Shown: positions 23,899-41,800 of the stretch, piece by piece | Position numbering within the stretch: the stretch's first letter is position 1 | How the letters are laid out: every line of letters begins with the position of its first letter | Assembly: GCF_023055435.1 (NCBI RefSeq) | Contig: NW_025964372.1 | Location: 33,170,001 to 33,234,000, forward strand | DNA from: Haliotis rufescens | Lineage: Eukaryota | Direction of reading: 5' to 3' | DNA: 64,000 nucleotides | The notes under the pieces: model-generated | The model's input: only the letters and a program-made list of their open reading frames with translations | Databases searched by the model: none | What the model was told of the DNA's origin: nothing | Program-made: the position numbers and the translations under genes

Positions 23899-24574
23899 TA
23901 TATCCCTGGACAAAGTTCTACCTGTTCTACAACAATATTGATGATATTTAGTGAGGACCAGACTCGATGCTTTGTTCCTAATGGGCCTCAAATATACTCT
24001 TTGCAATCCTTTACATTCATATGTCTGACCCACACCTCATTTGCAACTCCAAAGGAGTTGACCTGATTTTCTGCATCATCAAAGGAATTGTTGATTCCGT
24101 AACAGTAACAGTTGACTCAGTATTTGGAAGCAATATTTATTATGTTCTTGAGGAGAGGTCACCAGTACCACAGGAAACTAAAACAGGACCAGTCGGCCAC
24201 TTCACTTCTGTATTTACTTCCATGACATTTTGCCAACTAAAGGACCTGCACATTCGACTTCCAGTTTCAGACCATATCTATGTTCTACCATCCGATAGTC
24301 TCAATTATTTTCTACAGTTTTTCATAAATATTTAGACTATTAGAAGAAAGATTTTCTCAAACAGTCAAAATAATATCTTGGACATTTCCATCCCATAAAT
24401 ATTGACTTTCTGCCTCAAGCTTTGAAGAAAACGAGATACAATTAACTTGGATCAGTAATACAAACCTGTTTAGGGAAATAGAATTTGTCAAGTCTGATCC
24501 TATGTCATCAAGCTTAACACACAGCACGATTATTCTGATTGTCCATCCACAACACATTTCTCCAAGATATTGTA

Positions 24575-27500
24575 TCACTTGTTATTTTTCTCAGACGCTG
24601 GAATTCGACCTATCAAATAAAACTCGGGGTTTGGTTTCACACGCAGGAAGTGAGCTAGTCTGTTGGACATGCTCAGAAAGGATGCCAGTGCCCCAATGTC
24701 CCAGGCATCATCGTGGTTCATTCCGTTCTCGTACAGCCGCTCAAACTGCTCGTCTGCCGGTGAGTGACATGCGGCAACGGTTGTTGCAAAGTCCAGGATC
24801 GCCTTCTGTCGTATGTCCAGATCTGCCATTCTCCAGTTGGTGGACAGCTGGTAGAAAGGGGAACATTAAAAAAAAATGCTGACAGTGGTTACCATGGTAA
24901 CAACATAATAACATTCAAGAACACTAGTTAATCTCTTTTTACCCTAAGAATCGTAAACACTACTACTCTAATCTGTTTTCATTGTAGACCATGATAGGTC
25001 GAGTGAGTAGGTTGGTTGGGTTTAACGCCGCTTTTAACAGTATTCCAGTTATATTGTGGCGTGTCAGCTTTTAATGTGGGAAGAAAGCCCAAAGTGATGC
25101 AGGTCTCAGACGTTTACCACTTCGGTGAAACCCATGACCATGGGTATTGTGCTGAAAAACGAAGAAATATAATCGGGGAGAACCGGGATTCGAACCCAGT
25201 TAGGTCGGCAGAGCATGTACTGTTCTGCTAGTCATCTAACCCAATGACTCCATCTCGGTTAAACTGCTGATTGTCTATAACGTCCAGGAAAGTCTCACAC
25301 CATAGGGATATAAAGATAAGCAATGAACCAAGTCACTGAGCCAGACCACAACCAGATGTCATAAGTAAACTTTGTCTCAACCTCAGGCTCAACCTCTCAA
25401 CATGCTCACATCAAATTTTATTGTTGTGTTTAGACAAATATTGAAAACTATTTACTCCAGGGCCCCGTTACACAAAACGATTTGTAGGACTGAGATAGTT
25501 ACTCCCATAACATAGACTTACGACCCTCATAGGGCTAAGATAGTCGTAACTCCCATACTTTAACATAGACTTACGACAGTCATAGCGCTAAGATGATTGT
25601 AACTCTCATACTTTAACATAGACTAACAACAGTCTTAGTGCTAAGATGGTCGTAACTCCCATACTTTAACATTGACTTACGACAGTCAAAGCGCTAAGAT
25701 GATCGTAACTTCCATACATTAACATTGACTTACGACAGTCATAACACTAAGATGGTCGTAACTCCCATACTTTAACACAGACTTACGACGGTCTTAGCAC
25801 CTTGATCACTTTTTGGGATGGGCCCCTGGTGCCATAGTTCTCAATATTTGTTAAAAATGTACCATGTATGACCACTCTTGGCATCCCCCGCCATGATTTG
25901 GTGGAAATATTGCAAACCAACTCCCCAACAACAAAGACATTTAGCTCACCTGGTCTGCCAGAATAGGGTTGCGCGAGTGTAGCCTGTAGAGTGCACTGTG
26001 AGTAGCCACACAATACAGACACTGATTGTCCGCACTCACAACCACGGCGATCATCTCCTTGTCTGCTTTTGTCACATTACCTGGGTATAGAGAAGTCAAA
26101 CAAATACCGGTAAGTATCACTGAGGGATAACTTTAGTAATTACAACTTGTTTCATGTGAGGGTTTGTTTGGAGTTCAGCATAAGTTATAGGCATCACTGG
26201 GGTGTGCAGGGTCCCAAGGAGGCAGACTTCTTTTAGCTCACCTGGCCAGGTGATAAACTTTTTTCCTTTTTCGACTTGTCCAAAATTCAGGATAGATTTC
26301 CGCTGTCTTACCCTGGATCTTCATGGGTTTATGTTCTACTGAAAGTGGTCGATGAAAATGCAAGTATCCACACTTAAACTGGTTGATGAAGATGCTAGTA
26401 TCTGCATACAGATTTTTTCTCACAGTTTCTTTGTATTGAAGTGTAATTGTCAGTATAAACAGGTCACCAGCCAGGGATTATTGTTTCTCACAAAGAAAAC
26501 AACAGAAAGTTCCCCATGAAATAAAATAGATGGGAATCAAAATGAATGTAATGTTCGTTTGTTGTTTAACGCCGCACTCAGCAATATTCCAGCTATATGA
26601 CGGCGGACCAGATAATCCAGTGATGCAATTGGGATATGATGACATGCATCAACCAAGTCAGTGAGCCTAACGACCCGAGCCCGAGTTGCCTCTTACGACA
26701 AGCACAGTCGCCTTTTACGGCAAGCATGGGTTGCTGAAGACCTATTCTACCCCAGATCTTCACGGGTCGTTGGCATGACATACAAATGGACATTGACTAG
26801 TTCATATTTTGATCCCAACTAGAAGTTTCTTTTATTCATGATCCTACATGCTGATCTGATAATGGTTGATGAATTCAAAGATGCTGACAGGCAGCAAACA
26901 AGTTTTATTACCAGTTGAACAGATGTTTTACATTTGCACTGAAGCATTGCTGAAGAAGACAAGTTGTCACCAAGTAGTACTTTTGACTCCATACAGGTCA
27001 AGTACGACTACTTACTACTGTCTCGCATCAGCACTTCATGGTAGTTGATAAATGCTCGCAGTTCGTCAGGTCGATACGACAGAGCCCCAAAAACATTTGG
27101 TAGAAATTTGGACTGGAAAATGGCAAACAAGGAAATTATCAAAACTGAGACCACACAACCTGTTGAGTGTTGTGACCTAATTACAGTGAACACATGTGTC
27201 AGAATCAAGTGGAATTCACCAAATAAAACAAATTTTCACCCTCTGATCATCCACAATGATAAAGTGCAACCATGGTAACACATCACAATTGTATTATGAT
27301 CTATACCTTGGACCCATTCAGGAAGTCATGTCGACAGCTCCATCTCTCTTAGTCTTATCACTAGCCTGGCACAGAATTTCTCTTGCTTGTGCAATCATCA
27401 ATAAATTAAAATGTCTCTTCTGAATGCGAGTTTGACATTGATCTACATTCTAAAGATTCGGGTTAGAATTGGTCTTCAGCAACCCATGCTTGCCATAAGA

Positions 27501-29412
27501 GGCGCTTACAGGATCGGGTGGTCAGGCTTGCTTTCTTGGTTGATGCATATCATCGTATCCCAATTGTGGGATCGATGTTCATGATATATTGCTGAGTGGA
27601 GCATTAAACAACAAATAAACTAAGATCTACACTGGAAATGACTGCCTCGCCCAAGCAAGTCCGCAGTACATTTAACTGCATTAGAAGACTGTTATAAAAG
27701 TATGAACAAGTAATATGACATGAGAGGGAAGCTGTTATGCTACAAAATGTTCTAGTTGTATTTGCGACTAGTACTGGTGATATTGCCACTTGTGTTAATC
27801 ATGAAACAACAGTGTAATCTGGATGTCTATTTAAAACCCGTCTCAAAATATAGGTATATTCGTAAACGGGTCCAGGACATTTATCAGTACAGAATGGAGA
27901 TATAATAAACGAGGTTGCCCTCAGATACCCCGAGCTCTCTGGATTTTATATATATTACATATAGCCAGAATGCTGCTGACTGCAACAACAAAAATATTTA
28001 CTCACTCACCTTGTGGTTAAATAGATTGTTAGTGACGACAAGGACCTGGCTTCAATTCCCCACATGGGTACAATGTGTCGATCTCATTTCTGGTGTACCC
28101 TGCCGTGATATTGCTGGAATATTGCTAAAAACGGCATAAATCCATACTCACTCACTCACTCACTCACTCACTCACTCACTCTAACAACATGAATGGCATA
28201 TGAAACAATGAAGAGCTTAAAAATAAATTATCACAAAATGTATAGATCTCTTTAAGTAAATGTCTGTAACAGTAAACTTATGTAACGTATACATTAATTA
28301 ATATTTATTTTCTCTCATATTGATGGGGGGGGGCACAAGTGGCCCAGTCATCTGAGGCACTGCATCGTGGGTTCAAATCCTGGTTTCTAGGTTTGTAAGC
28401 ACTATACCCATGCTCATGGGTTTTACCAAAGTGGTAAACATCTGGGACCTGCATCACGTCAGGCTTTTCTCTCACATTAAACTGACATGCAGTGATATAA
28501 CTGGAATTCATTCTATTCAAAGCGGCGCTAAACCCAACTCAATCACTCATATTATCTGACCTTGCCAAACTTTTCCTTGAGGTCGTCTGGCAACTCCTGG
28601 ACATCCGGTACCGGGAATCGGCTGATGGGAGCATCATGTGACTCATCATGAGCCAGTCTCACACCTGATGTTGCAATACTTCTTCTGCTTAAATTTGTCT
28701 GAAATTAAAATATTGACATAATTCATTAATCAGTAACTGATTTGGTCAGTGCTTACATTAAAATATGGGTACTGTTGAAATGTTACAACTTCCCCATAAA
28801 CTTACTGAAACCTGCAAAATCTATCTTACATTTTCTTGGTTTGTTAAATCCTGTTTTGTTCATTGTATGATCTAGATCTAACTACTTTGTTTTATAACCT
28901 TCTGTATTTCAATTTGTTATGCACTAAACCCTAAATTAGTTACAGGGATGAAGGGTTAAAATCGCGAAAATGGTAAATTCTGAAACACAACTCTAAACAT
29001 AATAAAGAGATTAGATATTGTAAAATTAGAAAATTATCAAATCTAAGAGAAGTGAGGAAGTATGTTGTTCACGCCAGAAATGAGCTTCACATGTTGTACC
29101 CATTTGGGGACTTGAACCCAGCCTTCAGCATGACAAGCTATGCAACACCTTAACTACTAGGCTACCCAACCTCCCCTGGAACCCTAAGAAAGTATTACAG
29201 AGGGTCCAAACAATAAGATAGTGAAAGCAAACAATATCACTGAGAATAGAAACGCAGCATCACACTGTAAAGTGTACACTCTTGTCAAATGTAATTAAAA
29301 CAGAAATTGCATGTTAAGTAATAAGTACTATCTCTGTCAGTCCCTGTCATACCTGATTCTTGAAAATTATGCCTATTCTTCTCAAATACTGCAATTTGCT
29401 TCTTAAAAACAT
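24575..29412 (-). CDS. AhpD/CMD-family 'peroxidase-related enzyme' with putative mitochondrial presequence, about 232 aa, 5 coding exons
   Basis: Exons 29412-29353, 28698-28561, 27112-27016, 26080-25950 and 24847-24575 join in frame (699 nt). Protein: MFLRSKLQYLRRIGIIFKNQTNLSRRSIATSGVRL...ISRFPVPDVQELPDDL...FLPNVFGALSYRPDELRAF...KADKEMIAVVVSADNQCLYCVATH...RQKAILDFA...SNRLAHFLRVKPNPEFY. Contains the AhpD core E-x-I...NxCxYCxxxH. First-exon choice is less certain than the rest. Confidence 0.9.
25458..25829. mobile_element. PIF/Harbinger-like MITE with internal 53-bp tandem repeats
   Basis: Imperfect TIRs CAGGGCCCCGTTACACAAAACGAT / ...GGGATGGGCCCCTGG enclose about 6 units of CTTAGYGCTAAGATGGTCGTAACTCCCATACTTTAACATAGACTTACGACAGT. 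Confidence 0.75.
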
Positions 29413-29659
29413 GTTTGAGTATTAATGTATACGGCTTCTCAAAATAAGAAATGTTAGCAGATAATATTAACACTGATTTCTGCACTGGCTAGAAACATTT
29501 ATCTTTCAGCTGGTTGCATGGTTGTGCGAATGGTGTTGAGCCTGGTCCCGTCTCTAAATATCTCTTCAAAGAGACGCCGCACAGAAACCATCGGAAACCA
29601 GTTTAATAGAAGTGTTAGGGACTAGTTGTTTATTGCGATTTTGAGTTAACATTTACTTA

Positions 29660-29839
29660 CTCTAAAATTTAAAAACAAACACTACATCGGCAGGTTACAA
29701 AACAATAATAACTTAATCTTAATATGCAGACTCATAAACTATTCATTTGTCACTAAAACTACGTTTTATTAAATCTATATGAAACTATATACTCTATGCT
29801 CATTTCTGGAAATCCCCTTCTGACGTCACAGATACAATC
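29660..29839. promoter_or_regulatory. Bidirectional promoter AhpD-like / IDH3B with CRE palindrome
   Basis: Divergent ATGs at 29412(-) and 29840(+). TGACGTCA at 29821-29828. Minus-strand donor GTAAGT near 29660 suggests a non-coding first exon of the AhpD-like gene. Confidence 0.6.
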
Positions 29840-32800
29840 ATGGCGACCACGAGGTTATCCACGACTTTGAACATCGGAAAAACATTGGTCTCAAACTTGC
29901 GTTCTCTGTGCACTGTGAGTTTATCCAATAGTTGGTATGATTTATTTGTTAAGTGTCGCTTAAAGTATATCATCATGGGGTATTTTATATATCACTATGG
30001 TATTTGATGAACTTTCTGGCCGAAAAAGCAGACGGACAGTTTGACATTGACATTGTGATCACGTATTTTGACAGTTCATGGGCGTGATCAGAGAACGAGT
30101 TCCCACAGATTAAGTTGTCTTCATGTATTGAACCTTTTGGTGTTTTTACAAGAACGCTTAACCTTAGTACATGTAGTAGAAAACTAAAAATATGTATTAG
30201 CATGTTAATCTTCCGCTTATATCATGGTCAGTTAATTAATCCGAATCAATTTACAGATCACACCTGTCTAAAAATAAAAATGGTATTTAGCAAAACATTG
30301 AAACATATATTATTATTATTATTATTATTATTATCATTTGGTGATTCCGGATTAGAATTGGGCCCTAGCAACCTACATGCTGATCGTAAATAGCTGGAAA
30401 GAGGCGACTTAATGGATTGGATTTTCAGGCTTGGTGACTTGGTTGATGAAGTGTCAACCAACCAGCACGGATTGTTCCTTATAATCAAATATCTATCACT
30501 AAATTGAGCAGACTCAATTATTTACAGACCTCAGTCATATGGCTGCGGCACTCAACAACACACACTCACGTCACACATTATTATTATCATTTATTTCTGT
30601 AACCACCAGCTGGCCACCATTTATGGAGTGATATATGAAATTAATAAAATACCTGCCTTTTTCAATGAATTCATCCATTGATATCCATCCACTGGGGCAA
30701 TTTACCAAGACAAATTGAATATTGCATTGAAAAATGCAACTATATACAGGATATACCTTGCATGAATTCAGTAGCTTTAGCATTGCAAAATTGCTTTTGC
30801 AGAATGGGTTGATTTCTCTTTTGGTGAGTTAGGTCTACATGTTCCAGCAGTCTGGGAAAATCCCTATGTCATGTATATTGTAACATGAAGGGGCAGTGGG
30901 GCAGCCTAGTGGTTAAAGCATTCGCTCGTCAACCCGAAGACCTGGGTTTGATTCCCCACATGGGTACAATGTGTGAAGCCAATTTCTTGTTTCCCTGCCC
31001 TGTTATTGCTGGAATATTGCTAAAAGAGGCGTAAAACTAGACTCACTGTAATATCAAAACTTGATTATCCTGGTTCAAAAGGGATATGTAACAAATTAAG
31101 ACAACAATGAGTTATGTTACAATCAAGGCAGATTACTATATCACCATCAGCCTGTTTAGCCATCATTATGTACACAGTCGTTGTGATGTTGTTATCATGG
31201 TTATGGTGTGATCTTTTATTTTATTTTGTTCTCTGTTGTCCTGTAATGATTTGATTTTGTTGTGTTTTTTTGTTGTCGCAGCCAAGCGTGAGCAAAATTC
31301 CTGCCAGCAATGGCTTCCACACGACTCCTCACAAAACCGCGGTATGTGTTGTCACACCAGTGTCAATATGGTCATGCATGTCCCATAGCTTTGTTCTGTT
31401 GTAACCATGGTAACTAGTGGAACTGCACTGCAGGTTTTACTTGTGTCTTTACTTGTACAAACTGAGAATGAATGTAAATAATTAACATTGTGAGTCCTGG
31501 GAACACTAAAAAAGGGGGTTTGTAAGCCTTGAATTTTAAGGTCCCTCTTGAAAAGCCTTGATTTTTGTGTGTAATCCTTCAAAAGCCTTGTAAATCACCA
31601 AATTAGCTTGAAAAGCCTTGAATTTTTACATTTGCGTACTCAGAGATCGTACTCAGAGGTGTTCCAATTAGCATGAATAGATGTCAATCAAATCAGTTAC
31701 ACAGAAAATTACTTGATCTTAAACGTTCATGTTACATTCCTGAGGCAAGGAAGGAAATACTTCGGAAACACCCTGTGCAACCATGGTAACTGTAACAGAT
31801 TGAGTATCAAAATCAAAATGACGACTTTGGGCTTAGTGTATCACTTTGGCAGGAGTCGAAAAACAGAATGTTCTGATGTAACAATACCTTTGAAATATTT
31901 TTAATTGTCCATTCAACCAATCCAGAAGCTGAAATTTCCACTAACCAAGTAGTACTCCCTACTTAGCATCTTCATTCCCAGTTAAACATGCTTGAATCTT
32001 TTTACATTGTGCCCCGGTGACATCAGCTATCAGTTCATCAAATATATTTAGTTTGTATTACTTAGTGTGCACTTTCACACTTCACCTCCAAGTTATCGAC
32101 TGAATTGTTAATTTTGAATGTCTAGAATATCCCTGAGCCTGTGTCGAAGCCAGCTGGTCGCCATGTTGTGACGATGGTGCCCGGTGATGGCGTCGGCCCA
32201 GAGATGATGGGCGGCGTCATGGATGTGTTCCAAGCTGCCGGCGTTCCTGTCGACTTTGAGGAGATCTTCCTGAGGTATAGCAATAGTTGAAAACACAAGC
32301 ACAGCAGCAGCCATGTTGAAAAAACTACATGTAGCCATACTTAGTCAATTTGTTCAAAATGTCATGAAAGTTGGTAATTGTGTAGTTAGTGGTGGGGCTC
32401 AACGTATGTGTTCGCTTTCTTGCAATGTCATAAATTTTGACCTTGGTTTGACTTTTGCACTTTTACCTTGCTCTTAAATTGTCTCAAAATGCATTTCCTC
32501 AAACTGAAATCTCTTCAGACAAAGCTGGAAGTTTATGTGCTTGTTTTCACCAGTGATAACATCTGAATCTGATTGAGGTTTGAATCTGATTTTCAATGCG
32601 GGGTACCATGAGACAATGTTACCTTAAATAGGAGCGGGGTCAGCAAAATATGATACAAATCCCACCCATTATAAATACTGAGTCCCTAATATTGAAAAAC
32701 AATTCATGGCCACTGCTCAGTCATTTCTGCACTGTAATCATCTTAAATTCTCTCAAAATTCTATCTTCTTTGAAATTGCCAGACTGAGGAAGCTGAACTT

Positions 32801-35800
32801 TGGCTTCTTCTTATGATGACATCTTATTTTGTTCAAATATTTAGGATTTTACTGTTTGTTTGTGAAACAATTGGAAATACTGTATGTCATTAGAAACATT
32901 ATTCTCTTTAGAAGGTTTATGAGGCTTAGTTGAAACTTAGTGTGAAGTGAATATTACTGGTGTGTATTGGGGCACTGTAGACTGATGACTACATATCCAG
33001 GTGAGCTTCAGTGCCGTGGCAGTATTTTCTTGTTTTTCACATGAGCCTACTTTAGTGTTGAGGAAAAAAACTAATTTGTTGGATTGAAAATTTTCTTAGT
33101 TTGAACATCTGTTTTCTGGGTTTTTTTTAATCTTTCAGTACTGACAATACTCTAGATGTACTGTATTCTCCTACAACATTGTAGATTGATTAACCAAATC
33201 TGTTTTACCAGAAAACAAACTGGCATGGCCCAGATGAAAGTGCCAAACATTGCCGCTGAATGTGATTTCTTATAATCTTATATGCAGATTAATTTTTGTG
33301 TTTTCTTTCCCAGTGAAGTTCAACCGGGTCAGAGCGCCAGTTTGTCAACAGCCACTGAGTCATTTCTTAGGAATGGCGTCGGTCTGAAGGGCATTATCAC
33401 AACGCCAACCAGCTTTAAGGGAGGCGTACTGCGTACACTCAACATGAGGCTCAGGTAGAGTTATCTTTCCTTTCTGTGCATTAGTTTCCTGTGTTTCTTA
33501 GGTGTCCCCACAGACAATGGTTGTAAGACAACAACACAGGCTCCGTGTAGCAATGTCACGTTTCATAAGGCCCAAACAAATTGTACATGTTTCAGGTTTT
33601 CTCACTGACCCTCGTCCACAGCTCTTGATCCTAAACCTTTGTTCTCGTTTTTCACCTGAGTTGCTCCAAAGGGTTCTCTTTATTTTATGCCACTGTCTTC
33701 AATTGTCATTTGAACTGCAAGTTACTGGTACCATTTTTTAGAAAAAAATAAAAGTAAAATTCATAATCAGGTCTACCTGCCCTCTTTAGGTAGAATAGGT
33801 CTTCTGCAACCCCCATTCTTGCCATTACAGGGGACTATGCTTGTCATAAGAGGCGACTAACGGGATTGGGTGGTCAGGCTCGCTAACTTGGTTGATCCAT
33901 GTCATCGATCCCAATTGCATGGAATGATGCTCATGATATCAATCACTGGATTGTCTGGTCCAGACTCGATTATTTACAGACTGCTGTCATATAGCTAGAA
34001 TATTGCTGAGTGCGGCGTTAAACAACAAACAAACAAAAACAAAACATTGTCCAGCCTCATTGTGTCCTGGATTTCTTGATCTGTTATCGTGATCTACGTT
34101 GTGACAGACGAGAGTTGGATCTCTTTGCCAACGTGGTGTGGGTAAGGAGCTTGCCGGGCTTCAAGACCCGCCACAACAACCTGGACTTTGTCATCATACG
34201 TGAACAGACCGAGGGGGAATACAGCGCACTGGAGCACGAGGTGGGTGTCACAGAATCTGTCATGTTGCGGGACAGTCCTCCATACATCTTGCTTGTCTCA
34301 CCATGTTGAGCTAAGTAGGTCATTTCTCAAGTTTATTACACCATGGTGAGATAAGTAGGTCGTATCCCAAGTTGGTTTTACCATGTTGAGCTAAGTAGGT
34401 CATTTTTCAAGCTTATTACACGATGGTGAGATAAGTAGGTCATATCCCAAGTTTGTCTCACCATGTTGAGCTAAGTAGGTCATTTCTCAAGCTTATTACA
34501 CCATGGTGAGATAATTAGGTTGTATCCCAAGTTTGCCTCACAATGGTGAGCTGAGTAGGTCATTTTTCAAGCTTATTACACCATGGTGAGATAAGTAGGT
34601 CGTATCCCAAGTTTGTCTCACCATGGTGAGCTGAGTAGGTCATATCTCAAGCTTAATACACCCTGGTGAGTTAAGTAGGTCATATCCCAAGTTTGTCTCA
34701 CCATGTTGAGCTAAGTAGGTCATTTCTCAAGCTTATTACACCATGGTGGGATAATTAGGTTGTATCCCAAGTTTGTCTCACCATGGTGAGCTGAGTAGGT
34801 CATTTCTCAAGCTTATTACACCATGGTGAGATAAGTAGGTCGTATCTCCACCTTTTTCTTAGAATAATGCACTAAGTAGGTCGTATCCCAGACAAAAAAT
34901 TTAAGTTTGGCTCAAGATTACCACTACTTTGAGGCGGGTGTGTGGGAAGCCCAGTGGACAAAGCTGCTGCAACAAACTGTAAAGTTGTGTCCCTTTACTA
35001 GCAGGATCACAAGTTCAAATCCCAGGTTCTTACCATCTCTCATCTTGGTCTGTTGGCACCAATGTAGCCAACATGTACGACAGGCATCACCATTGCCTTC
35101 TTATTGTTTGCTTGTGGTAAAAGCTGTGACATGCTCTTGGTCATACAGACAATGGTTCATGAACTATGGCATCACCATTGCCTTCTTATTGTTTGCTTGT
35201 GGTAAAAGCTGTGACATGCTCTTGGTCATACAGACAATGGCTCATGAACTATGGCATCACCACTGCCTTCTTATTGTTTGCTTGTGGTAAAAGCTGTGAC
35301 ATGCTCTTGGTCATACAGACAATGGTTCATGAACTATGGCATCACCACTGCCTTCTTATTGTTTGCTTGTGGTAAAAGCTGTGACATGCTCTTGGTCATA
35401 CAGACAATGGTTCATGAACTATGGCATCACCATTGCCTTCTTATTGTTTGCTTGTGGTAAAAGCTGTGACATGCTCTTGGTCATACAGACAATGGTTCAT
35501 GAACTATGGCATCACCACTGCCTTCTTATTGTTTGCTTGTGGTAAAAGCTGTGACATGCTCTTGGTCATACAGACAATGGTTCATGAACTATGGCATCAC
35601 CACTGCCTTCTTATTGTTTGCTTGTGGTAAAAGCTGTGACATGCTCTTGGTCATACAGACAATGGTTCATGAACTATGGCATCACCACTGCCTTCTTATT
35701 GTTTGCTTGTGGTAAAAGCTGTGACATGCTCTTGGTCATACATACAATGGTTCATGAACTATGGCATCACCACTGCCTTCTTATTGTTTGCTTGTGGTAA

Positions 35801-38800
35801 AAGCTGTGACATGCTCTTGGTCATACAGACAATGGTTCATGAACTATGGCATCACCATTGCCTTCTTATTGTTTGCTTGTGGTAAAAGCTGTGACATGCT
35901 CTTGGTCATACAGACAATGGTTCATGAACTATGGCATCACCATTGCCTTCTTATTGTTTGCTTGTGGTAAAAGCTGTGACATGCTCTTGGTCATACAGAC
36001 AATGGTTCATGAACTGAACTATGGCATCACCATTGCCTTCTTATTGTTTGCTTGTGGTAAAAGCTGTGACATGCTCTTGGTCATACAGACAATGGTTCAT
36101 GAACTATGGCATCACCATTGCCTTCTTATTGTTTGCTTGTGGTAAAAGCTGTGACATGCTCTTGGTCATACAGACAGTGGTTCATGAACTATGGCATCAC
36201 CATTGCCTTCTTATTGTTTGCTTGTGGTAAAAGCTGTGACATGCTCTTGGTCATACAGACAGTGGTTCATGAACTATGGCATCACCATTGCCTTCTTATT
36301 GTTTGCTTGTGGTAAAAGCTGTGACATGCTCTTGGTCATACATACAATGGTTCATGAACTATGGCATCACCATTGCCTTCTTATTGTTTGCTTGTGGTAA
36401 AAGCTGTGACATGCTCTTGGTCATACAGACAGTGGTTCATGAACTATGGCATCACCATTGCCTTCTTATTGTTTGCTTGTGGTAAAAGCTGTGACATGCT
36501 CTTGGTCATACAGACAATGGTTCATGAACTATGGCATCACCACTGCCTTCTTATTGTTTGCTTGTGGTAAAAGCTGTGACATGCTCTTGGTCATACAGAC
36601 AGTGGTTCATGAACTATGGCATCACCATTGCCTTCTTATTGTTTGCTTGTGGTAAAAGCTGTGACATGCTCTTGGTCATACATACAATGGTTCATGAACT
36701 ATGGCATCACCATTGCCTTCTTATTGTTTGCTTGTGGTAAAAGCTGTGACATGCTCTTGGTCATACAGACAATGGCTCATGAACTATGGCATCACCACTG
36801 CCTTCTTATTGTTTGCTTGTGGTAAAAGCTGTGACATGCTCTTGGTCATACAGACAATGGTTCATGAACTATGGCATCACCACTGCCTTCTTATTGTTTG
36901 CTTGTGGTAAAAGCTGTGACATGCTCTTGGTCATACAGATAATGGTTCATGAACTATGGCATCACCATTGCCTTCTTATTGTTTGCTTGTGGTAAAAGCT
37001 GTGACATGCTCTTGGTCATACAGACAATGGTTCATGAACTATGGCATCACCATTGCCTTCTTATTGTTTGCTTGTGGTAAAAGCTGTGACATGCTCTTGG
37101 TCATACAGACAATGGCTCATGAACTATGGCATCACCACTGCCTTCTTATTGTTTGCTTGTGGTAAAAGCTGTGACATGCTCTTGGTCATACAGACAATGG
37201 CTCATGAACTATGGACACAGAGAAGATGGGTCAGGTTTGAGTAAGATGCTAATCTCCAGTTTGATTGTGTCAATCATGTGTTCAGAGTGTCGAAGGAGTG
37301 ATCGAGTGTCTCAAGATCATCACCCGGGATAACTCCATGAGAATTGCCAAGTTTGCATTTGACTATGCCCTCCGTCACAACAGAGAAAAGGTCACAGCAG
37401 TTCACAAAGCCAACATCATGTAAGTTGTGTTGTGAATCTCAAAGTTTTAAGATATGTAGAGAATCTCTACCGGGCGTCTTTTCGTTTTATCAATGCATGT
37501 TGATTAATCGATATCAAAAGACACAAGGGTTAGCATGGTTAGATTCTATTTATCATCCAAAATCTTACTTCCTATTATTTAGTTCATAAACAGTAATAAC
37601 CAGTGTCTTGAGTGTAAAAAGTACAGCTAACCAGTTTCAGTGGCAGAGGGATTGGTGATGTCATTAGATTGTGATGTCTTTAGATTGTGATGTCATTAGA
37701 TTGTGATGTCATGGTAAACAATAGCATCACAAGCATTGTAGGGATATGTCCTAGGAGATAGTATTTGATCTCACACAAATGATATCTCCTGTGGAAGCCA
37801 GTTTGGGATGATGAATAACTTTATACAGGGTCTTCTTTATTTACTCTGTATGTGCTTAGTTCATATCTTGCCTTCTGCATTGTTTTGACCTTCAAAGTTT
37901 GTACCTAGATTTTAGTTAATTGATCAATGGCTTCAAGATTTTGACTCCCCATATCAGCAGAGTCCTATTTTGTACACTTCAGGAAGCTTGGTGACGGACT
38001 GTTCCTCAAGTGTTGTGAGGAGGTTGCTGCCCTGTACCCCAAGATACAGTTTGAAACTATGATCATCGACAACTGCTGCATGCAAGTATGTGGCCAGCCA
38101 TATTACAGCTGTAATGATAGGTTACATTAGGTCCCCAGCAACCTATGCTTGTTGTAAGAGGCAAGACCAGGTGGTCAGGTGACTTGGTTCATTGCATGTG
38201 ATCGTATGGATTGATGCTCATGATGTCAATCACTGGATTGTCTGGTACAGACGGCCGTCATATAGCTGGAATATTGCTGAGTGCGGCGTTAAACAACAAA
38301 CAAAACAAAACATAATTCACTCCCTCCATGTCTGTAATGTCACCAGATGAGACTAAATTATTTACTTCATCATGATTTTTTACCTGTCATTGGGTCCAGA
38401 TTATGTCTTTCTCTACTTTTCATGGGGGCAGGAGTGGCCCAGTCATCTAAGGTGCTGCAATTCGCTGTGCAGAGTTGCATCCCTTGGACATGTCAGAAAC
38501 TTATGATCATGGGTTCAAATTTATGGTTCGCCCCAATTATGTTTGTGATTGTGATGGAACTGGAATACTGTCTAAAGTGGCGTTAAACCTAACAGACTCA
38601 CTCACACACTTTTATGACTTTGACCCAATCTCATCAAAATCAGACCTTAGTTCTCACTACCGCTAAACAAAGATCTGAACACATCCCATTAGGGGTCACG
38701 TCAGAATGGCCTTTCATCCGACCAATGAGAGTGTCGCTTACCAGATCATGAAAGTGACAGTCGGAATGTGATTTCTAATCATACAACCTCGAAAACTTTA

Positions 38801-41800
38801 ACACAGGGTATTCCGAACGATAGTTACAGGTATAACGACTGAATCCATACAATCTAGACCATCTATTAGCCATTCAAGAATGTTCTTTTGTTTAGGTTTC
38901 AAATTTGTGTTTCGAAGCGTAGTCGCCAATTTGAAATTAGTGCCGTAATGCACAAGAAAGCTGCCTTCTGATTGGTCATTCTATTGGTCGGTCAAAGTTT
39001 GCGCAAGGTCGGTCTGACATGACCCGTAATGGGATGTCCTCAGATCTTTGTTTAGCGGTAGCGAGAACTAAGGTCTGATTTTAATGAGATTTGACTTTGA
39101 CTTTGCTGTGAATTCTGATGATGTTTCTATGTCAAGATACTTTTCAAATCATTGTCAATGACACTTCCAGATGGTGTCGAACCCCCACCAGTTCGATGTG
39201 ATGGTCATGCCTAACCTGTACGGCAACATCCTTGACAACTTGGCAGCAGGGCTGGTCGGCGGTGCCGGTGTTGTACCAGGAGAGAGCTACAGCAAGGATG
39301 TTGCCATCTTTGAGCAGGTATGTCACATTTCAGAGAAAATATTAAGCAAATGAATGTTTTGAGTTCTCCAATAGGGTGGTGGTAGCCTTGCAGCAGTTTC
39401 ACATCGGTTCCTGTCCATGTCATCACCTCCTGTCGGGGTACATTCATGAACGTGGGTTCTAGGATGTGAAGTTGACATGCCGGAATAAAACTGGAATACT
39501 GTTCAAAGAAGTGTTAAACCCAACACGCTCACTCACTCACTTCCTGTCCATGTCATCACCTCCTGTCCATGTCATCACTTCCTGTCCATGTCATCATGTC
39601 CTGTCCATGTCATCACTTCCTGTCCATGACATAATATCCTGTCCATGTCATCACTGCCTGTCCATGTCATCACTTCCTGTCCATGACATCATTTCCTGTC
39701 CATGTCATCACTTCCTGTCCATGTCATCACTTCCTGTCCATGACATCATTTCCTGTCGGTGACATCATTTCCTGTCCATGTCATCACTTCCTGTCCATGT
39801 CATCACCTCCTGTCCATGTCATAACTTCCTGTCCATGTCATCACCTCCTGTCCATGACATAATATCCTGTCCATGTCATCACTGCCTGTCCATGTCATCA
39901 CTTCCTGTCCATGACATCATGTCCTGTCCATGTCATCACTTTCTGTCCATGTCATCACTTCCTGTCCATGACATCATTTCCTGTCCATGTCATCACTTCC
40001 TGTCCATGTCATCACCTCCTGTCCATGTCATCACTTCCTGTCCATGACATCATTTCCTGTCCATGTCATCCCTTCCTGTCCATGTCAACACTTCCTGTCC
40101 ATGACATCATATCCTGTCCATGTCATCACTGCCTGTCCATGTCATCACTTCCTGTCAATGTCATCACTTCCTGTCCATGACATCATTTCCTGTCCATGTC
40201 ATCACTTTATGTTAACAGGGTGCCCGCCATGCTTTTGCTGAGGCTGTAGGGAAGAACATCGCCAACCCAACTGCCGTCCTGCTTAGCGCTTGTAACATGC
40301 TCAAACACATTCACCTGGAGTACCACTCTAAGCTCATCGAGGAGGCTGTCATCCGTGTCATCAAGACTGGCAAGGTCAGTAGATATGAGCATGTTTGTTC
40401 ACTTGTTTAATGCCGCACTCAGCAACCAGTGGTCTGTAAATAAACAAGTCTGGACTGACAATCCAGTGATTGGTATCATGAGAATCAATCCACGCAAGTG
40501 GGAAACACTGACACGTATCAACCAAGTCAGCGAGCCTGACCACCCGATCCTGGGTTGCATGGGTTGTTGAAGACCAATTCTAACCCCGATCTCAATCATG
40601 GAAGTCCCATGACATACGACAGACCATTTCAAATCTGTCTCATCCTATTGGTGTTCATCACCAGTCATGGATTCCTAATTTCTAATTTGGAACCTTCTGA
40701 TTGAATTAATATCATGCAAAGAGTTTGTGATTGATGAGTTATAGTAGAGCAGTGATGCAGCCATTCATTTATTTATTCATTAAAAAATTGACATAGTTGA
40801 AACTAAAGGATTGATAATCCAGTTTATTATATCTTTACTCTATAATGATAGTTACCCTAGACCCATTAGCCATCATCAACTTTCATTTTGAGTCCAATTC
40901 AAAATATTTCACACTAAAAACAGCCATCAGTTCTCAGTCTGTGCCTAAAACTTTGGAGACTAGTAGCATGAAACACAGATCTTAGTGGGGCACGGGTGGC
41001 CCAGTCGTCTAAGGCGCGGCGATTCATGTGCAGAGTTGCGTCCCTTGGGCACGCCAGAAACCTATGATTGTGGATACGAAACCCGGTTCGCCCCGATTAT
41101 GTTTCTAGGTTTGTCAGCACCATACCCATGCTCGTGGGTTTCACCGAAGTGGTAAACGTCTGAGACCTGCATCACTCCGGGCTTTCCTCCCACATTAAGC
41201 TGACACGCCGCGATATAACTGGAATACTGTTAAAAGCGGCTAAAACCCAACTCACTCACTCACAGATCTTAGCATCATTTTCATTAGATTTCAGTGTTAT
41301 TATTTGGACTATTATTTGTTGAGCTTACTAGACGGAACAGACTTTTACTTGATTCAGGGCTTCGTACTAGTGGCTTGTCTGGAAGTCACAGACTGGAAGC
41401 TTTGTGCAAAGCTACTGATAAGATAGATGGAGGCGATGACATCGCTTCCTATAGGAGACTATGGTAGCAGATGGGTCCTGGTTATTTATTCTAATACAGT
41501 CAAGTCCCAATAATCCAACATTGTTGGTTGCATATGATTATATGTCTAAATTTAAGGAGTATGTTGGATAAACGGAATTGAGTAGTATCAACGTTCGTGA
41601 TCGAAAATCAGACAACTACACAAAAGATAACGATACAAACACCAGAGACCGCAAAGCTTAAGAAAGCTGCTCTCTAAGTGGCTAACATTTACCTCCTGTT
41701 AGTCATTTCATTGGTCGGTCATAGTTCACGAAAGGTTGTTCTGACGTGACCTGTGATGGGATGTCCTCGGCGATAGCAAGAACTTGTATCTGATTTTAAT

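What the first reader, a model, noticed from the sequence alone, without database searches (positions are those of the whole stretch)
24575..29412. Spliced animal gene for a bacterial-type AhpD CxxC enzyme with a mitochondrial-type leader
Seen: five in-frame exons, mostly missed by the ORF track, encoding ISRFPVP...PNVF...EMIAVVVS-ADNQCLYCVATH...SNRLA, preceded by about 35 Arg/Ser/Leu-rich residues with no acidic residue. Knowledge: this layout matches the prokaryotic uncharacterised 'peroxidase-related enzyme' subgroup of the AhpD/CMD fold, and in Mycobacterium AhpD relays electrons from lipoylated dehydrogenase components to a peroxiredoxin. Humans have no such stand-alone enzyme that I recognise, although uncharacterised homologues probably exist in some other animals. 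Inference: a mitochondrial, possibly lipoamide/NADH-driven antioxidant route that is uncharacterised in animals, either anciently transferred or patchily retained.
Basis: partly seen in the sequence, partly recalled or inferred. Interest (0 to 1): 0.8.

Follow-up and report, generated by a model that had tools for sequence, protein, structure and literature searches.

The report
Abalone bacterial-type AhpD-like redox gene
This is a real, spliced and expressed abalone gene for a bacterial-type thiol (CxxC) redox enzyme with a probable mitochondrial address tag; it is not an abalone oddity but one member of an old, unstudied animal gene family, found from corals to marsupials.

Summary
Five GT-AG exons on the minus strand (29412..24575) encode 232 aa. 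RNA-derived contigs from three studies join all five exons at the predicted borders. Each exon translation lies exactly in RefSeq XP_046330908.1, "uncharacterized protein LOC124114400 [Haliotis rufescens]", so the model is already annotated but unnamed.

The protein belongs to NCBIfam TIGR01926 ("peroxidase-related enzyme", AhpD/CMD fold). Its closest solved structure is 2PRR. It keeps the full AhpD proton relay (Glu107, Cys119, Tyr121, Cys122, His126). It is not an orthologue of Mycobacterium AhpD.

Homologues with the same basic, acid-poor N-terminal extension occur in cnidarians, molluscs, brachiopods, echinoderms, hemichordates, amphioxus, fishes, amphibians, reptiles, birds and marsupials. 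They form one clade (100/98 support) inside a bacterial radiation. This rules out recent transfer. It fits one ancient origin followed by vertical descent and losses.

Best reading: a mitochondrial CxxC thiol-disulfide oxidoreductase or weak peroxidase. The localisation, the reductant and the substrate are inferred, and nothing here supports the lipoamide relay specifically.

I found no paper on the animal family. The gene is ordinary as a gene and moderately interesting as an unstudied, conserved animal redox protein.

The parts
29413..29573 (-). 5' UTR (minimum extent) with two short out-of-frame uORFs (ATG at 29519, 6 codons; ATG at 29498, 14 codons)
   Evidence: Spliced contigs reach 29573 (X4) and 29541 (X9).
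29353..29412 (-). Exon 1 coding part: Met plus 19 residues, the first part of the basic leader; donor GT at 29352
28561..28698 (-). Exon 2: rest of the leader (first acidic residue is D38) and the start of the conserved domain (ISRFPVP)
27016..27112 (-). Exon 3: PNVF helix region; matches TIGR01926 positions 27-55; ends in phase 1
25950..26080 (-). Exon 4: catalytic helix hairpin with Glu107, Cys119, Tyr121, Cys122, His126 (E-x11-C-x-Y-C-x3-H)
24575..24847 (-). Exon 5 coding part: C-terminal 90 residues plus TGA stop (24575-24577); matches TIGR01926 positions 105-178
24400..24574 (-). 3' UTR, the observed part; the contigs run on for 230-535 nt beyond 24400, outside the stretch that was laid
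   Evidence: table 8 (records 1, 17, 21)
29574..29839 (.). Short divergent intergenic region shared with the IDH3B gene (ATG at 29840 on the + strand). No contig depth at 29608-29793 in any of four runs. Perfect CRE palindrome TGACGTCA at 29821-29828.

Best explanation
A single-copy, expressed nuclear gene (RefSeq LOC124114400) of red abalone encodes a 232-aa member of the TIGR01926 'peroxidase-related' branch of the AhpD/CMD superfamily. The mature all-helical domain (about residues 47-222) carries the complete AhpD-type active site: Cys119 and Cys122 in a CxxC at a helix start, flanked by Glu107, Tyr121 and His126. It most likely cycles between dithiol and disulfide. In that cycle it would act as a small thiol-disulfide oxidoreductase with weak direct hydroperoxidase activity, or as the reductant of a thiol peroxidase. 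The 37-46 residue N-terminal extension is absent from all bacterial relatives and is basic and acid-poor. It is predicted as an N-terminal helix followed by a disordered linker, and most likely imports the protein into the mitochondrial matrix. The gene is the abalone orthologue of an ancient metazoan family (teleost 'si:ch211-175m2.5'). That family arose once, from a bacterial-type ancestor, before cnidarians and bilaterians split. It was then inherited vertically and lost in some lineages. Shown here: the gene model, splicing, expression, family membership, fold, active-site conservation, purifying selection and animal monophyly. Inferred: mitochondrial location, redox chemistry, the physiological reductant and the substrate.
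For: Gene and transcript: GT-AG exons. Spliced contigs in runs from three studies and more than one species label. Exact exon-wise match to XP_046330908.1. Single copy in the 1.33-Gb assembly. Family: collinear TIGR01926 hits of the exons. The H. rubra orthologue P0001 scores 147.7 bits against a cut-off of 81.8 over profile 1-178, and Lingula, frog, coral and possum members score 185-190 bits. Pfam CMD matches exon 4. Structure: exons 4 and 5 match PDB 2PRR at E 6e-11 and 6.5e-20. The AF2 model of P0001 has pLDDT 86.8 and matches 2PRR with TM 0.92, rmsd 1.7 A and 47% identity, then 3C1L, 6K40, 2OYO and 2PFX. Active site: the spacing E-x11-C-x-Y-C-x3-H equals the proton relay described for PA0269 (Glu36, Cys48, Tyr50, Cys51, His55) and M. 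tuberculosis AhpD (PMC3141380). Cys119, Cys122 and His126 are invariant, and Glu107 and Tyr121 are at least 90% conserved, in 40 animal and bacterial sequences. The motif is present in 197 of 198 leader-bearing homologues. Function precedent: the D. radiodurans relative DR1765 (PDB 6K40) protects against H2O2 in a CxxC-dependent way (PMC8945050, citing Zhao 2020), and PA0269 shows weak peroxidase activity (PMC3141380). Selection: 6 of 8 coding differences seen in transcripts of other runs are synonymous, and the other 2 lie in the last three residues. Between H. rufescens and H. rubra the domain differs at 8 of 176 sites and the leader at 13 of 46. Leader: 198 leader-bearing (at least 25 aa) homologues have a median 49-aa extension with 14.7% R+K and 4.3% D+E, against 14.4% D+E in the mature part; 116 bacterial-type ones have a median 7 aa. 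AF2 gives helix 2-25 followed by disorder at 26-38. The gene lies head-to-head with the mitochondrial IDH3B gene. Phylogeny: all named animals plus the leader-bearing transcripts form one clade at 100/98 and SH-aLRT 98. Taxa are listed.
Against: No localisation predictor or experiment was available. The hydrophobic moment of the exon-1 helix (0.71) is reached by 24% of shuffles, and no clean MPP cleavage motif could be established. No enzymatic data exist for any animal member or for the closest bacterial members; 2PRR, 2PFX, 3C1L and 2OYO are structural-genomics entries without assays. Bacterial neighbourhoods give no redox partner. The AhpD/CMD fold also supports other chemistry, for example the Bmp8 debrominase (Foldseek E 3e-5). 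The runs are only guessed to be RNA; the spliced form is what shows it.
Confidence: 0.55

Rival explanations
1. One reading: the protein works like Mycobacterium AhpD. It would take electrons from dihydrolipoamide on E2 subunits, recycled by DLD and NADH, and pass them to a mitochondrial peroxiredoxin.
For: It has the same CxxC proton-relay residues (PMC3141380). In M. tuberculosis and C. glutamicum, AhpD is reduced by lipoylated proteins and reduces AhpC or OsmC/Ohr (PMC8945050). A probable matrix location would place it beside lipoylated dehydrogenases. It shares a divergent promoter with a TCA-cycle gene.
Against: It is not an orthologue of Mtb AhpD: TIGR00777 scores 15 bits against 192, the topology differs, and Foldseek gives E 0.2-0.4 with rmsd 10-12 A. 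In 80 bacterial loci of close relatives, none of the ten recurrent neighbour families scanned with Pfam was Lpd, SucB, AhpC or OsmC. No OsmC/Ohr domain was detected in the abalone genome. There is no biochemical evidence for any TIGR01926 member using lipoamide.
Confidence: 0.15
2. Same enzyme, other compartment. The N-terminal extension is not a mitochondrial presequence, and the protein acts in the cytosol or another organelle.
For: The amphipathicity test was not significant. No predictor was run and there are no localisation data. Two uORFs precede the main ATG in the 5' UTR, although no alternative in-frame start was found.
Against: An extension of 30-65 aa is kept in all animal lineages despite fast sequence turnover. 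It is always basic and acid-poor, which is the usual signature of matrix presequences. It has no hydrophobic core typical of a signal peptide, and no C-terminal PTS1-like tripeptide is seen in the aligned animal sequences.
Confidence: 0.2
3. Different chemistry on the same fold: thiol-dependent detoxification of a small molecule (for example reductive dehalogenation as in Bmp8, or another CMD-type reaction), not peroxide or disulfide reduction.
For: Foldseek finds the Bmp8 debrominase at E 3e-5. The closest bacterial relatives are uncharacterised. Some lie next to a second small CMD protein, a CoA-transferase or an ABC exporter.
Against: The full AhpD proton relay is conserved across about 300 homologues. 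Identity to Bmp8 is only 17-18%, with rmsd 4.6-5 A. No NCBIfam decarboxylase model matched. The one relative that has been studied behaves as an oxidative-stress protein (PMC8945050).
Confidence: 0.08
4. Recent horizontal transfer into abalone, or bacterial contamination of the assembly.
For: Identity to bacterial proteins is about 50%.
Against: The gene has four spliceosomal introns filled with host repeats and is spliced in transcripts. It is flanked by animal genes. Orthologues exist in four Haliotis species and across Metazoa in a single clade whose branching broadly follows animal phylogeny.
Confidence: 0.01

Closest known systems
NCBIfam TIGR01926 'peroxidase-related enzyme'; solved members 2PRR (Ralstonia/Cupriavidus), 2PFX, 3C1L and 2OYO
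   Same: End-to-end profile match above the cut-off. 47% identity and TM 0.92 to 2PRR. Same helices before and after the AhpD core. Same E-x11-C-x-Y-C-x3-H site.
   Different: The animal protein has a 37-46 aa basic N-terminal extension and is encoded by a five-exon nuclear gene. Haliotis and Gigantopelta lack four residues after the 'KFG' segment. None of these bacterial proteins has a published activity.
Deinococcus radiodurans DR1765 AhpD-like protein (PDB 6K40)
   Same: Same subfamily fold (Foldseek E 4e-12, TM 0.89) and the same CxxC. It is the only relative found here with genetic evidence: the mutant is H2O2-sensitive and rescue depends on the CxxC (PMC8945050).
   Different: Only 28% identity. 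It is bacterial and cytosolic, and its reductant is unknown as well.
Mycobacterium tuberculosis AhpD (TIGR00777; PDB 1KNC, 1GU9)
   Same: Same superfamily and the same catalytic hairpin with Glu, Cys, Cys and His. It is the source of the lipoamide-relay idea.
   Different: The topology differs and it is a trimer. It has His instead of Tyr between the cysteines. The profile score is far below the cut-off and the structural match is weak. It is not an orthologue.
Sestrins (PA26, PF04636), the known AhpD-fold proteins of animals
   Same: Distant fold similarity: Foldseek to human Sestrin2 gives E 0.011, and a faint precomputed PF04636 hit is recorded on P0001.
   Different: Sestrins are fused two-domain proteins of about 480 aa that regulate GATOR2/mTORC1. 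This protein is a single-domain 232-aa stand-alone enzyme with an intact CxxC. The Sestrin review PMC11429811 does not mention a stand-alone animal AhpD-like protein in the passages searched.
Vertebrate 'si:ch211-175m2.5', Xenopus 'XB22169562' and 'uncharacterized CMD superfamily protein' gene models
   Same: They are orthologues in the same animal clade, with the same leader-plus-domain architecture and about 45% identity.
   Different: No difference in kind. Many tetrapods and cartilaginous fishes have CPYC where abalone and teleosts have CLYC. None has been characterised.

Membership tests
NCBIfam TIGR01926 peroxidase-related enzyme | Whole-protein score above the curated cut-off (81.8 bits) with full-length profile coverage | tested here: met
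   The exons were scored apart: 20 + 44.7 + 44.3 bits at profile positions 27-55, 61-102 and 105-178. The H. rubra orthologue P0001 (93% identical in exon 5) scores 147.7 bits over profile 1-178. The window's joined model itself was not scored, by instruction.
NCBIfam TIGR01926 peroxidase-related enzyme | CxxC with the AhpD proton-relay residues (Glu, Cys, Tyr/His, Cys, His) | tested here: met
   Glu107, Cys119, Tyr121, Cys122 and His126 are present. They are invariant or at least 90% conserved, and the motif is found in 197 of 198 leader-bearing homologues.
NCBIfam TIGR01926 peroxidase-related enzyme | Fold of the solved members (2PRR, 2OYO, 2PFX, 3C1L) | tested here: met
   The AF2 model of P0001 has pLDDT 86.8. 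Foldseek to 2PRR gives TM 0.92 and rmsd 1.7 A.
NCBIfam TIGR01926 peroxidase-related enzyme | Oligomeric (hexameric ring) assembly reported for solved relatives | not tested
   No multimer prediction was run. PMC3141380 reports hexamers for 2OYO and others.
True AhpD (TIGR00777, M. tuberculosis type) | Profile score above the cut-off (191.95 bits) | tested here: not met
   Exon 4 scores 15.1 bits. There is no hit at E<=0.001 for five full-length animal orthologues.
True AhpD (TIGR00777, M. tuberculosis type) | Same chain topology as 1KNC/1GU9 | tested here: not met
   Foldseek gives E 0.2-0.4, TM 0.37-0.54 and rmsd 10-12 A. PMC3141380 describes the differing topology.
True AhpD (TIGR00777, M. 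tuberculosis type) | Reduced by lipoylated SucB/Lpd and reduces AhpC | not testable with these tools
   This needs biochemistry. Bacterial neighbourhoods gave no such partner.
Pfam CMD (PF02627) | Domain score above the gathering threshold (23 bits) | tested here: met
   Exon 4 alone scores 25.2 bits. It is the only CMD hit in the whole assembly.
gamma-Carboxymuconolactone decarboxylase (PcaC) | Match to a decarboxylase-specific model | tested here: not met
   No decarboxylase model appears among the NCBIfam hits. The active site is of the CxxC AhpD type.
Mitochondrial matrix protein with a cleavable presequence | N-terminal extension absent from prokaryotic homologues; basic, hydroxylated and acid-poor | tested here: met
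   The first 37 residues hold 8 R/K and no D/E. 198 leader-bearing homologues have a median 49-aa leader with 14.7% R+K and 4.3% D+E; bacterial-type ones have a median of 7 aa.
Mitochondrial matrix protein with a cleavable presequence | Amphipathic helix and MPP cleavage motif | tested here: inconclusive
   AF2 predicts helix 2-25 followed by disorder at 26-38. The hydrophobic moment of 0.71 is reached by 477 of 2000 shuffles. R-2/R-3-like sites are only suggestive.
Mitochondrial matrix protein with a cleavable presequence | Experimental localisation or processing | not testable with these tools
   No predictor (TargetP, MitoFates) or proteome data were at hand.
Sestrin (PF04636) | Two fused AhpD-like domains with the DDYDY hinge | tested here: not met
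   The protein is a single 232-aa domain. Foldseek to Sestrin2 gives E 0.011 and covers only part of the target (TMt 0.35).

The most novel reading that the evidence does not exclude
Most animals, from corals to marsupials, keep a bacterial-derived AhpD-like CxxC enzyme in their mitochondria. It was acquired once before the cnidarian-bilaterian split. It forms an extra thiol-based peroxide or disulfide defence, possibly fed by lipoamide/DLD. It would have gone unnoticed because the lineages of the main laboratory models (placental mammals, and apparently flies and nematodes) lost it.
Probability: 0.3. Interest if true: 0.65.

Novelty: new member of a known kind. Interest (0 to 1): 0.45.

Why it matters
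If the localisation and chemistry hold, animal mitochondria outside placental mammals have a thiol redox component that is missing from textbook schemes (Prx3/Prx5, Trx2, Grx2, GPx). The family is highly conserved: 45-70% identity between phyla and up to about 65% to bacterial proteins. It is under purifying selection, and it is directly testable in zebrafish (si:ch211-175m2.5), Xenopus, chicken or oyster. Its loss in some lineages could bear on differences in oxidative-stress handling. For this genome scan, the practical result is that the gene is real, already annotated as 'uncharacterized', and not a lineage-specific transfer.

Tried and rejected
1. Recent HGT or contamination was rejected: the gene has introns, spliced transcripts and animal neighbours, and animals are monophyletic.

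2. Orthology to M. tuberculosis AhpD was rejected.

3. Bacterial gene neighbourhoods were searched for a redox partner. In 80 Burkholderiales loci the most frequent neighbour is an MsbA-like ABC exporter (15 loci). Next come a thioesterase, a CoA-transferase, a small second CMD protein, an SDR and a heptosyltransferase. None of the ten recurrent neighbour families scanned was Lpd, SucB, peroxiredoxin, TrxR or OsmC, so this was not informative.

4. OsmC/Ohr in the abalone genome: no hit. This is weak evidence because the search works exon by exon.

5. Paralogues: none. Exon 5 and the CMD profile hit only this locus.

6. Literature: no paper holds 'ch211-175m2.5'. Searches combining carboxymuconolactone decarboxylase or AhpD with animal terms gave only bacterial, fungal or sestrin papers. 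Two of these searches were badly designed and wasted.

7. The careful mixture-model tree (74 rows) did not finish in two 300-s runs. I report its quick PMSF tree and a finished careful LG+G4 tree of 51 rows, whose bootstrap had not fully settled. Rows left out of the second tree are long branches (P0135, P0063, P0115, P0114, P0083, P0116, Rissa P0178), the BED fusion P0044, and near-duplicates.

8. The amphipathicity test of the leader was not significant.

9. A tRNA scan of the repeat-rich introns found none.

Conservation of the IDH3B neighbourhood in other animals therefore could not be tested.

11. By instruction the spliced model was searched exon by exon and the joined sequence was never built, typed or searched. 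Full-length work used database proteins returned by the tools, mainly the H. rubra orthologue P0001. Identity of the model with RefSeq P0153 was checked by placing each exon translation separately.

Presence or absence in human was not searched.


Full report
**Observation.** The region 24575-29412 holds a five-exon gene on the minus strand.
- I translated each exon apart and fixed the borders from the sequence.
- The exons are: exon 1 29412..29353; exon 2 28698..28561; exon 3 27112..27016; exon 4 26080..25950; exon 5 24847..24575, including the TGA stop.
- All four introns begin with GT and end with AG. The phases fit (exon 3 ends with one base of a split codon), and the sum is 232 codons.
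- The main ATG has A at -3. It is preceded by in-frame stops and by two short out-of-frame uORFs.
The first 37 residues hold eight Arg/Lys and no Asp/Glu.

**Following the instruction on spliced models.** I searched the model exon by exon and left the joined step out. The joined protein was never built, typed or sent to a tool.

**Is the gene real?** Three independent lines say yes.
- Exons 3, 4 and 5 hit one NCBIfam model, TIGR01926 'peroxidase-related enzyme', in collinear order: profile positions 27-55, 61-102 and 105-178, scoring 20, 44.7 and 44.3 bits. Exon 4 alone passes the Pfam CMD threshold.
- Public-run contigs laid on 24400-29950 include a 1283-nt record from run X4. It maps as 24400-24847 | 25950-26076 | 27012-27112 | 28561-28698 | 29353-29573, that is, all five exons joined with the introns removed. 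The 4-nt offset at the exon 3/4 joint is an alignment ambiguity, because GTAA lies on both sides.
- Run X9 (a different study and species label) has a 1539-nt record whose listed pieces cover exons 1, 2, 4 and 5, with a record gap of exon-3 length. Run X1 has a partial one. The runs are only guessed to be RNA, but a spliced form is what RNA gives.
- A whole-library phmmer search with exon 5 returned a 232-aa protein at 93% identity. Its cluster contains XP_046330908.1, 'uncharacterized protein LOC124114400 [Haliotis rufescens]'. Each exon translation sits exactly in it, at residues 1-20, 21-66, 67-98, 100-142 and 143-232.
The gene is single-copy in the 1.33-Gb assembly.

**What the protein is.**
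- Full-length orthologues pass TIGR01926 end to end. H. rubra scores 147.7 bits; Lingula, a frog, a coral and a possum score 185-190 bits; the cut-off is 81.8.
- The nearest solved structure by sequence is 2PRR. Exon 4 aligns to residues 69-110 (E 6e-11) and exon 5 to residues 112-196 (E 6.5e-20).
- An AlphaFold2 model of the H. rubra orthologue has mean pLDDT 86.8. It superposes on 2PRR with TM 0.92, rmsd 1.7 A and 47% identity. The next matches are 3C1L, 6K40, 2OYO and 2PFX.
- Exon 4 carries E-x11-C-x-Y-C-x3-H. This is the spacing of the five proton-relay residues described for P. aeruginosa PA0269 (Glu36, Cys48, Tyr50, Cys51, His55) and M. tuberculosis AhpD (Glu118, Cys130, His132, Cys133, His137) (PMC3141380).
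- In a 40-sequence alignment of animals and bacteria, Cys119, Cys122 and His126 are invariant. Glu107 and Tyr121 are at least 90% conserved. Among 198 leader-bearing homologues, 197 keep the motif.

**It is not Mycobacterium AhpD.**
- The true AhpD model, TIGR00777, scores 15 bits against a cut-off of 192.
- That model does not appear at all among the hits of the full-length orthologues.
- Foldseek to 1KNC/1GU9 is weak: E 0.2-0.4 and rmsd 10-12 A. This agrees with the different topology described in PMC3141380.

**Selection.**
- Transcript contigs of other runs differ from the window at eight coding sites. Six changes are synonymous. The two replacements fall in the last three residues.
- Between H. 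rufescens and H. rubra the domain differs at 8 of 176 positions, and the leader at 13 of 46.
- The catalytic domain is therefore under strong constraint. The leader evolves fast but keeps its composition.

**Distribution and origin.** Named homologues with the same architecture occur in the following groups.
- Four Haliotis species.
- Other gastropods: Gigantopelta, Biomphalaria, Elysia, Bradybaena, Candidula.
- Bivalves: Mytilus, Saccostrea, Mactra, Potamilus, Pecten, Argopecten, Mya, Mercenaria, Sinanodonta.
- A chiton (Liolophura) and the brachiopod Lingula.
- Echinoderms: crinoids, starfish, sea urchins and a sea cucumber.
- Hemichordates (Ptychodera, Saccoglossus, Glandiceps) and amphioxus.
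- Cnidarians: Acropora, Montipora, Porites, Actinia.
- Vertebrates: sharks, rays, chimaera, sturgeon, bichir, bowfin, lungfish and many teleosts (gene name si:ch211-175m2.5); frogs, salamanders and caecilians; crocodilians, turtles and squamates; many birds; and marsupials (Trichosurus, Sarcophilus).
- The only placental entry seen was a 177-aa dolphin model that lacks the CxxC half.
- I did not search human sequence. No arthropod or nematode appeared in the lists. These lists show only the best 120 hits, so absence is not shown.

**Trees.**
- In a finished maximum-likelihood tree (51 rows, LG+G4), all 15 named animals and 6 leader-bearing transcripts form one clade at 100/98. Vertebrates (100/99) separate from invertebrates (98/95). 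Every short, bacterial-type sequence lies on the other side. The bootstrap of this tree had not fully settled.
- The quick PMSF tree of 74 rows gives the same animal clade at SH-aLRT 98.
- The bacterial side is an unresolved polytomy, so no donor can be named.
- This rules out a recent transfer. It fits one origin before the cnidarian-bilaterian split, followed by vertical descent and losses.
- These data cannot say whether that origin was a bacterial transfer into an early animal or older eukaryotic (mitochondrial) heritage. Non-animal eukaryotes were not sampled adequately. One leader-bearing, AT-rich sequence of unknown origin (P0114) falls outside the animal clade on a long branch.

**The leader.**
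- Bacterial-type members start 4-11 residues before the ISRFP motif. All animal members have a 30-65-residue extension.
- Over 198 such proteins the extension is 14.7% Arg+Lys and 4.3% Asp+Glu. The mature part is 14.4% Asp+Glu.
- The model shows helix 2-25, then a disordered stretch at 26-38, then the folded domain.
- There is no hydrophobic signal-peptide core and no PTS1-like C-terminus.
- This is the usual signature of a matrix presequence, but it is compositional evidence only. The hydrophobic-moment test was not significant, and no predictor was available.

**The neighbour.**
- The gene lies head-to-head with an NAD-isocitrate dehydrogenase gene. Its Iso_dh exons lie at window 37310-37426, 39165-39320 and 40243-40377. 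Its best PDB match is the IDH3 beta subunit.
- The stretch 29608-29793 between the two genes has no contig depth in any of four runs.

**Mechanism.**
- Most likely the mature protein is a CxxC thiol-disulfide oxidoreductase of the mitochondrial matrix. It would have weak direct hydroperoxidase activity or a role in reducing a thiol peroxidase.
- The basis is the intact AhpD relay plus two precedents. PA0269 shows weak H2O2 reduction (PMC3141380). D. radiodurans DR1765 (6K40) has a mutant that is H2O2-sensitive and is rescued in a CxxC-dependent way (PMC8945050, citing Zhao et al. 2020).
- The lipoamide/DLD/NADH route is only an analogy to a non-orthologous enzyme. Eighty loci of close bacterial relatives show no conserved redox partner. 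The abalone genome shows no OsmC/Ohr domain.

**Known or new.**
- The gene model and its orthologues are already in public databases as 'uncharacterized' or 'CMD-like domain-containing' proteins. The family (TIGR01926) and the fold are known.
- I found no paper on any animal member. In the passages I searched, a recent review of AhpD-fold proteins in eukaryotes discusses only sestrins (PMC11429811).
- I therefore class it as a new (uncharacterised) member of a known kind. It is ordinary as a gene, and moderately interesting as a conserved, probably mitochondrial redox protein absent from the usual model organisms.

**Limits.**
- The mixture-model careful tree did not finish.

Noticed in passing
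window 24958-25329, 25516-25887, 26446-26817, 27376-27747, 27934-28677: The introns are packed with very high-copy interspersed repeats. Summed contig depth is 10^4-10^5 there, against about 10 on the exons. Joints link 25090 with 28465 on opposite strands, so the same repeat family sits inverted in introns 4 and 2. ARAGORN finds no tRNA in them.
   Followed up: partly
window 28141-28182: A (CTCA)n microsatellite lies in intron 2; reads seemed cut there (read laying skipped 28135-28189).
   Followed up: no
window 29498-29539: Two short out-of-frame uORFs (6 and 14 codons) lie inside the observed 5' UTR of the AhpD-like mRNA and could dampen translation.
   Followed up: no
window 29821-29828: A perfect CRE/ATF palindrome TGACGTCA lies 12 nt upstream of the IDH3B start codon, in the short region shared by the two divergent genes.
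   Followed up: no
window 29840-40377 (+ strand): The neighbouring gene is the NAD-isocitrate dehydrogenase beta subunit (IDH3B). Collinear Iso_dh exons lie at 37310-37426, 39165-39320 and 40243-40377. Its first exon encodes a basic leader.
   Followed up: partly
protein P0044 (Biomphalaria glabrata XP_055893210, 384 aa): This snail paralogue appears to fuse two N-terminal BED-type zinc fingers (C..C...H...H pattern; its B. pfeifferi orthologue is named 'BED-type domain-containing protein') to the AhpD-like domain. The second active-site Cys is replaced by Phe (CKYF). It may be a non-catalytic or redox-sensing DNA-binding derivative.
   Followed up: no
protein P0016 (Delphinus delphis XP_059869360, 177 aa): This is the only placental-mammal entry seen. 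It keeps a well-conserved C-terminal half but has an unrelated N-terminal half without the CxxC, which looks like a relic or a mis-modelled decaying gene.
   Followed up: no
loci L002-L081 (Burkholderiales): In 15 of 80 bacterial loci, the TIGR01926 gene follows an MsbA-like ABC exporter gene on the same strand; in the example locus L002 the stop and start overlap. In 9 loci a small second CMD-family gene lies beside it.
   Followed up: partly
window 28659: The reference base T differs from G in transcript contigs of three runs, including two with the same species label. The change is synonymous (AGA/CGA Arg), so it is probably a polymorphism of the sequenced individual.
   Followed up: partly
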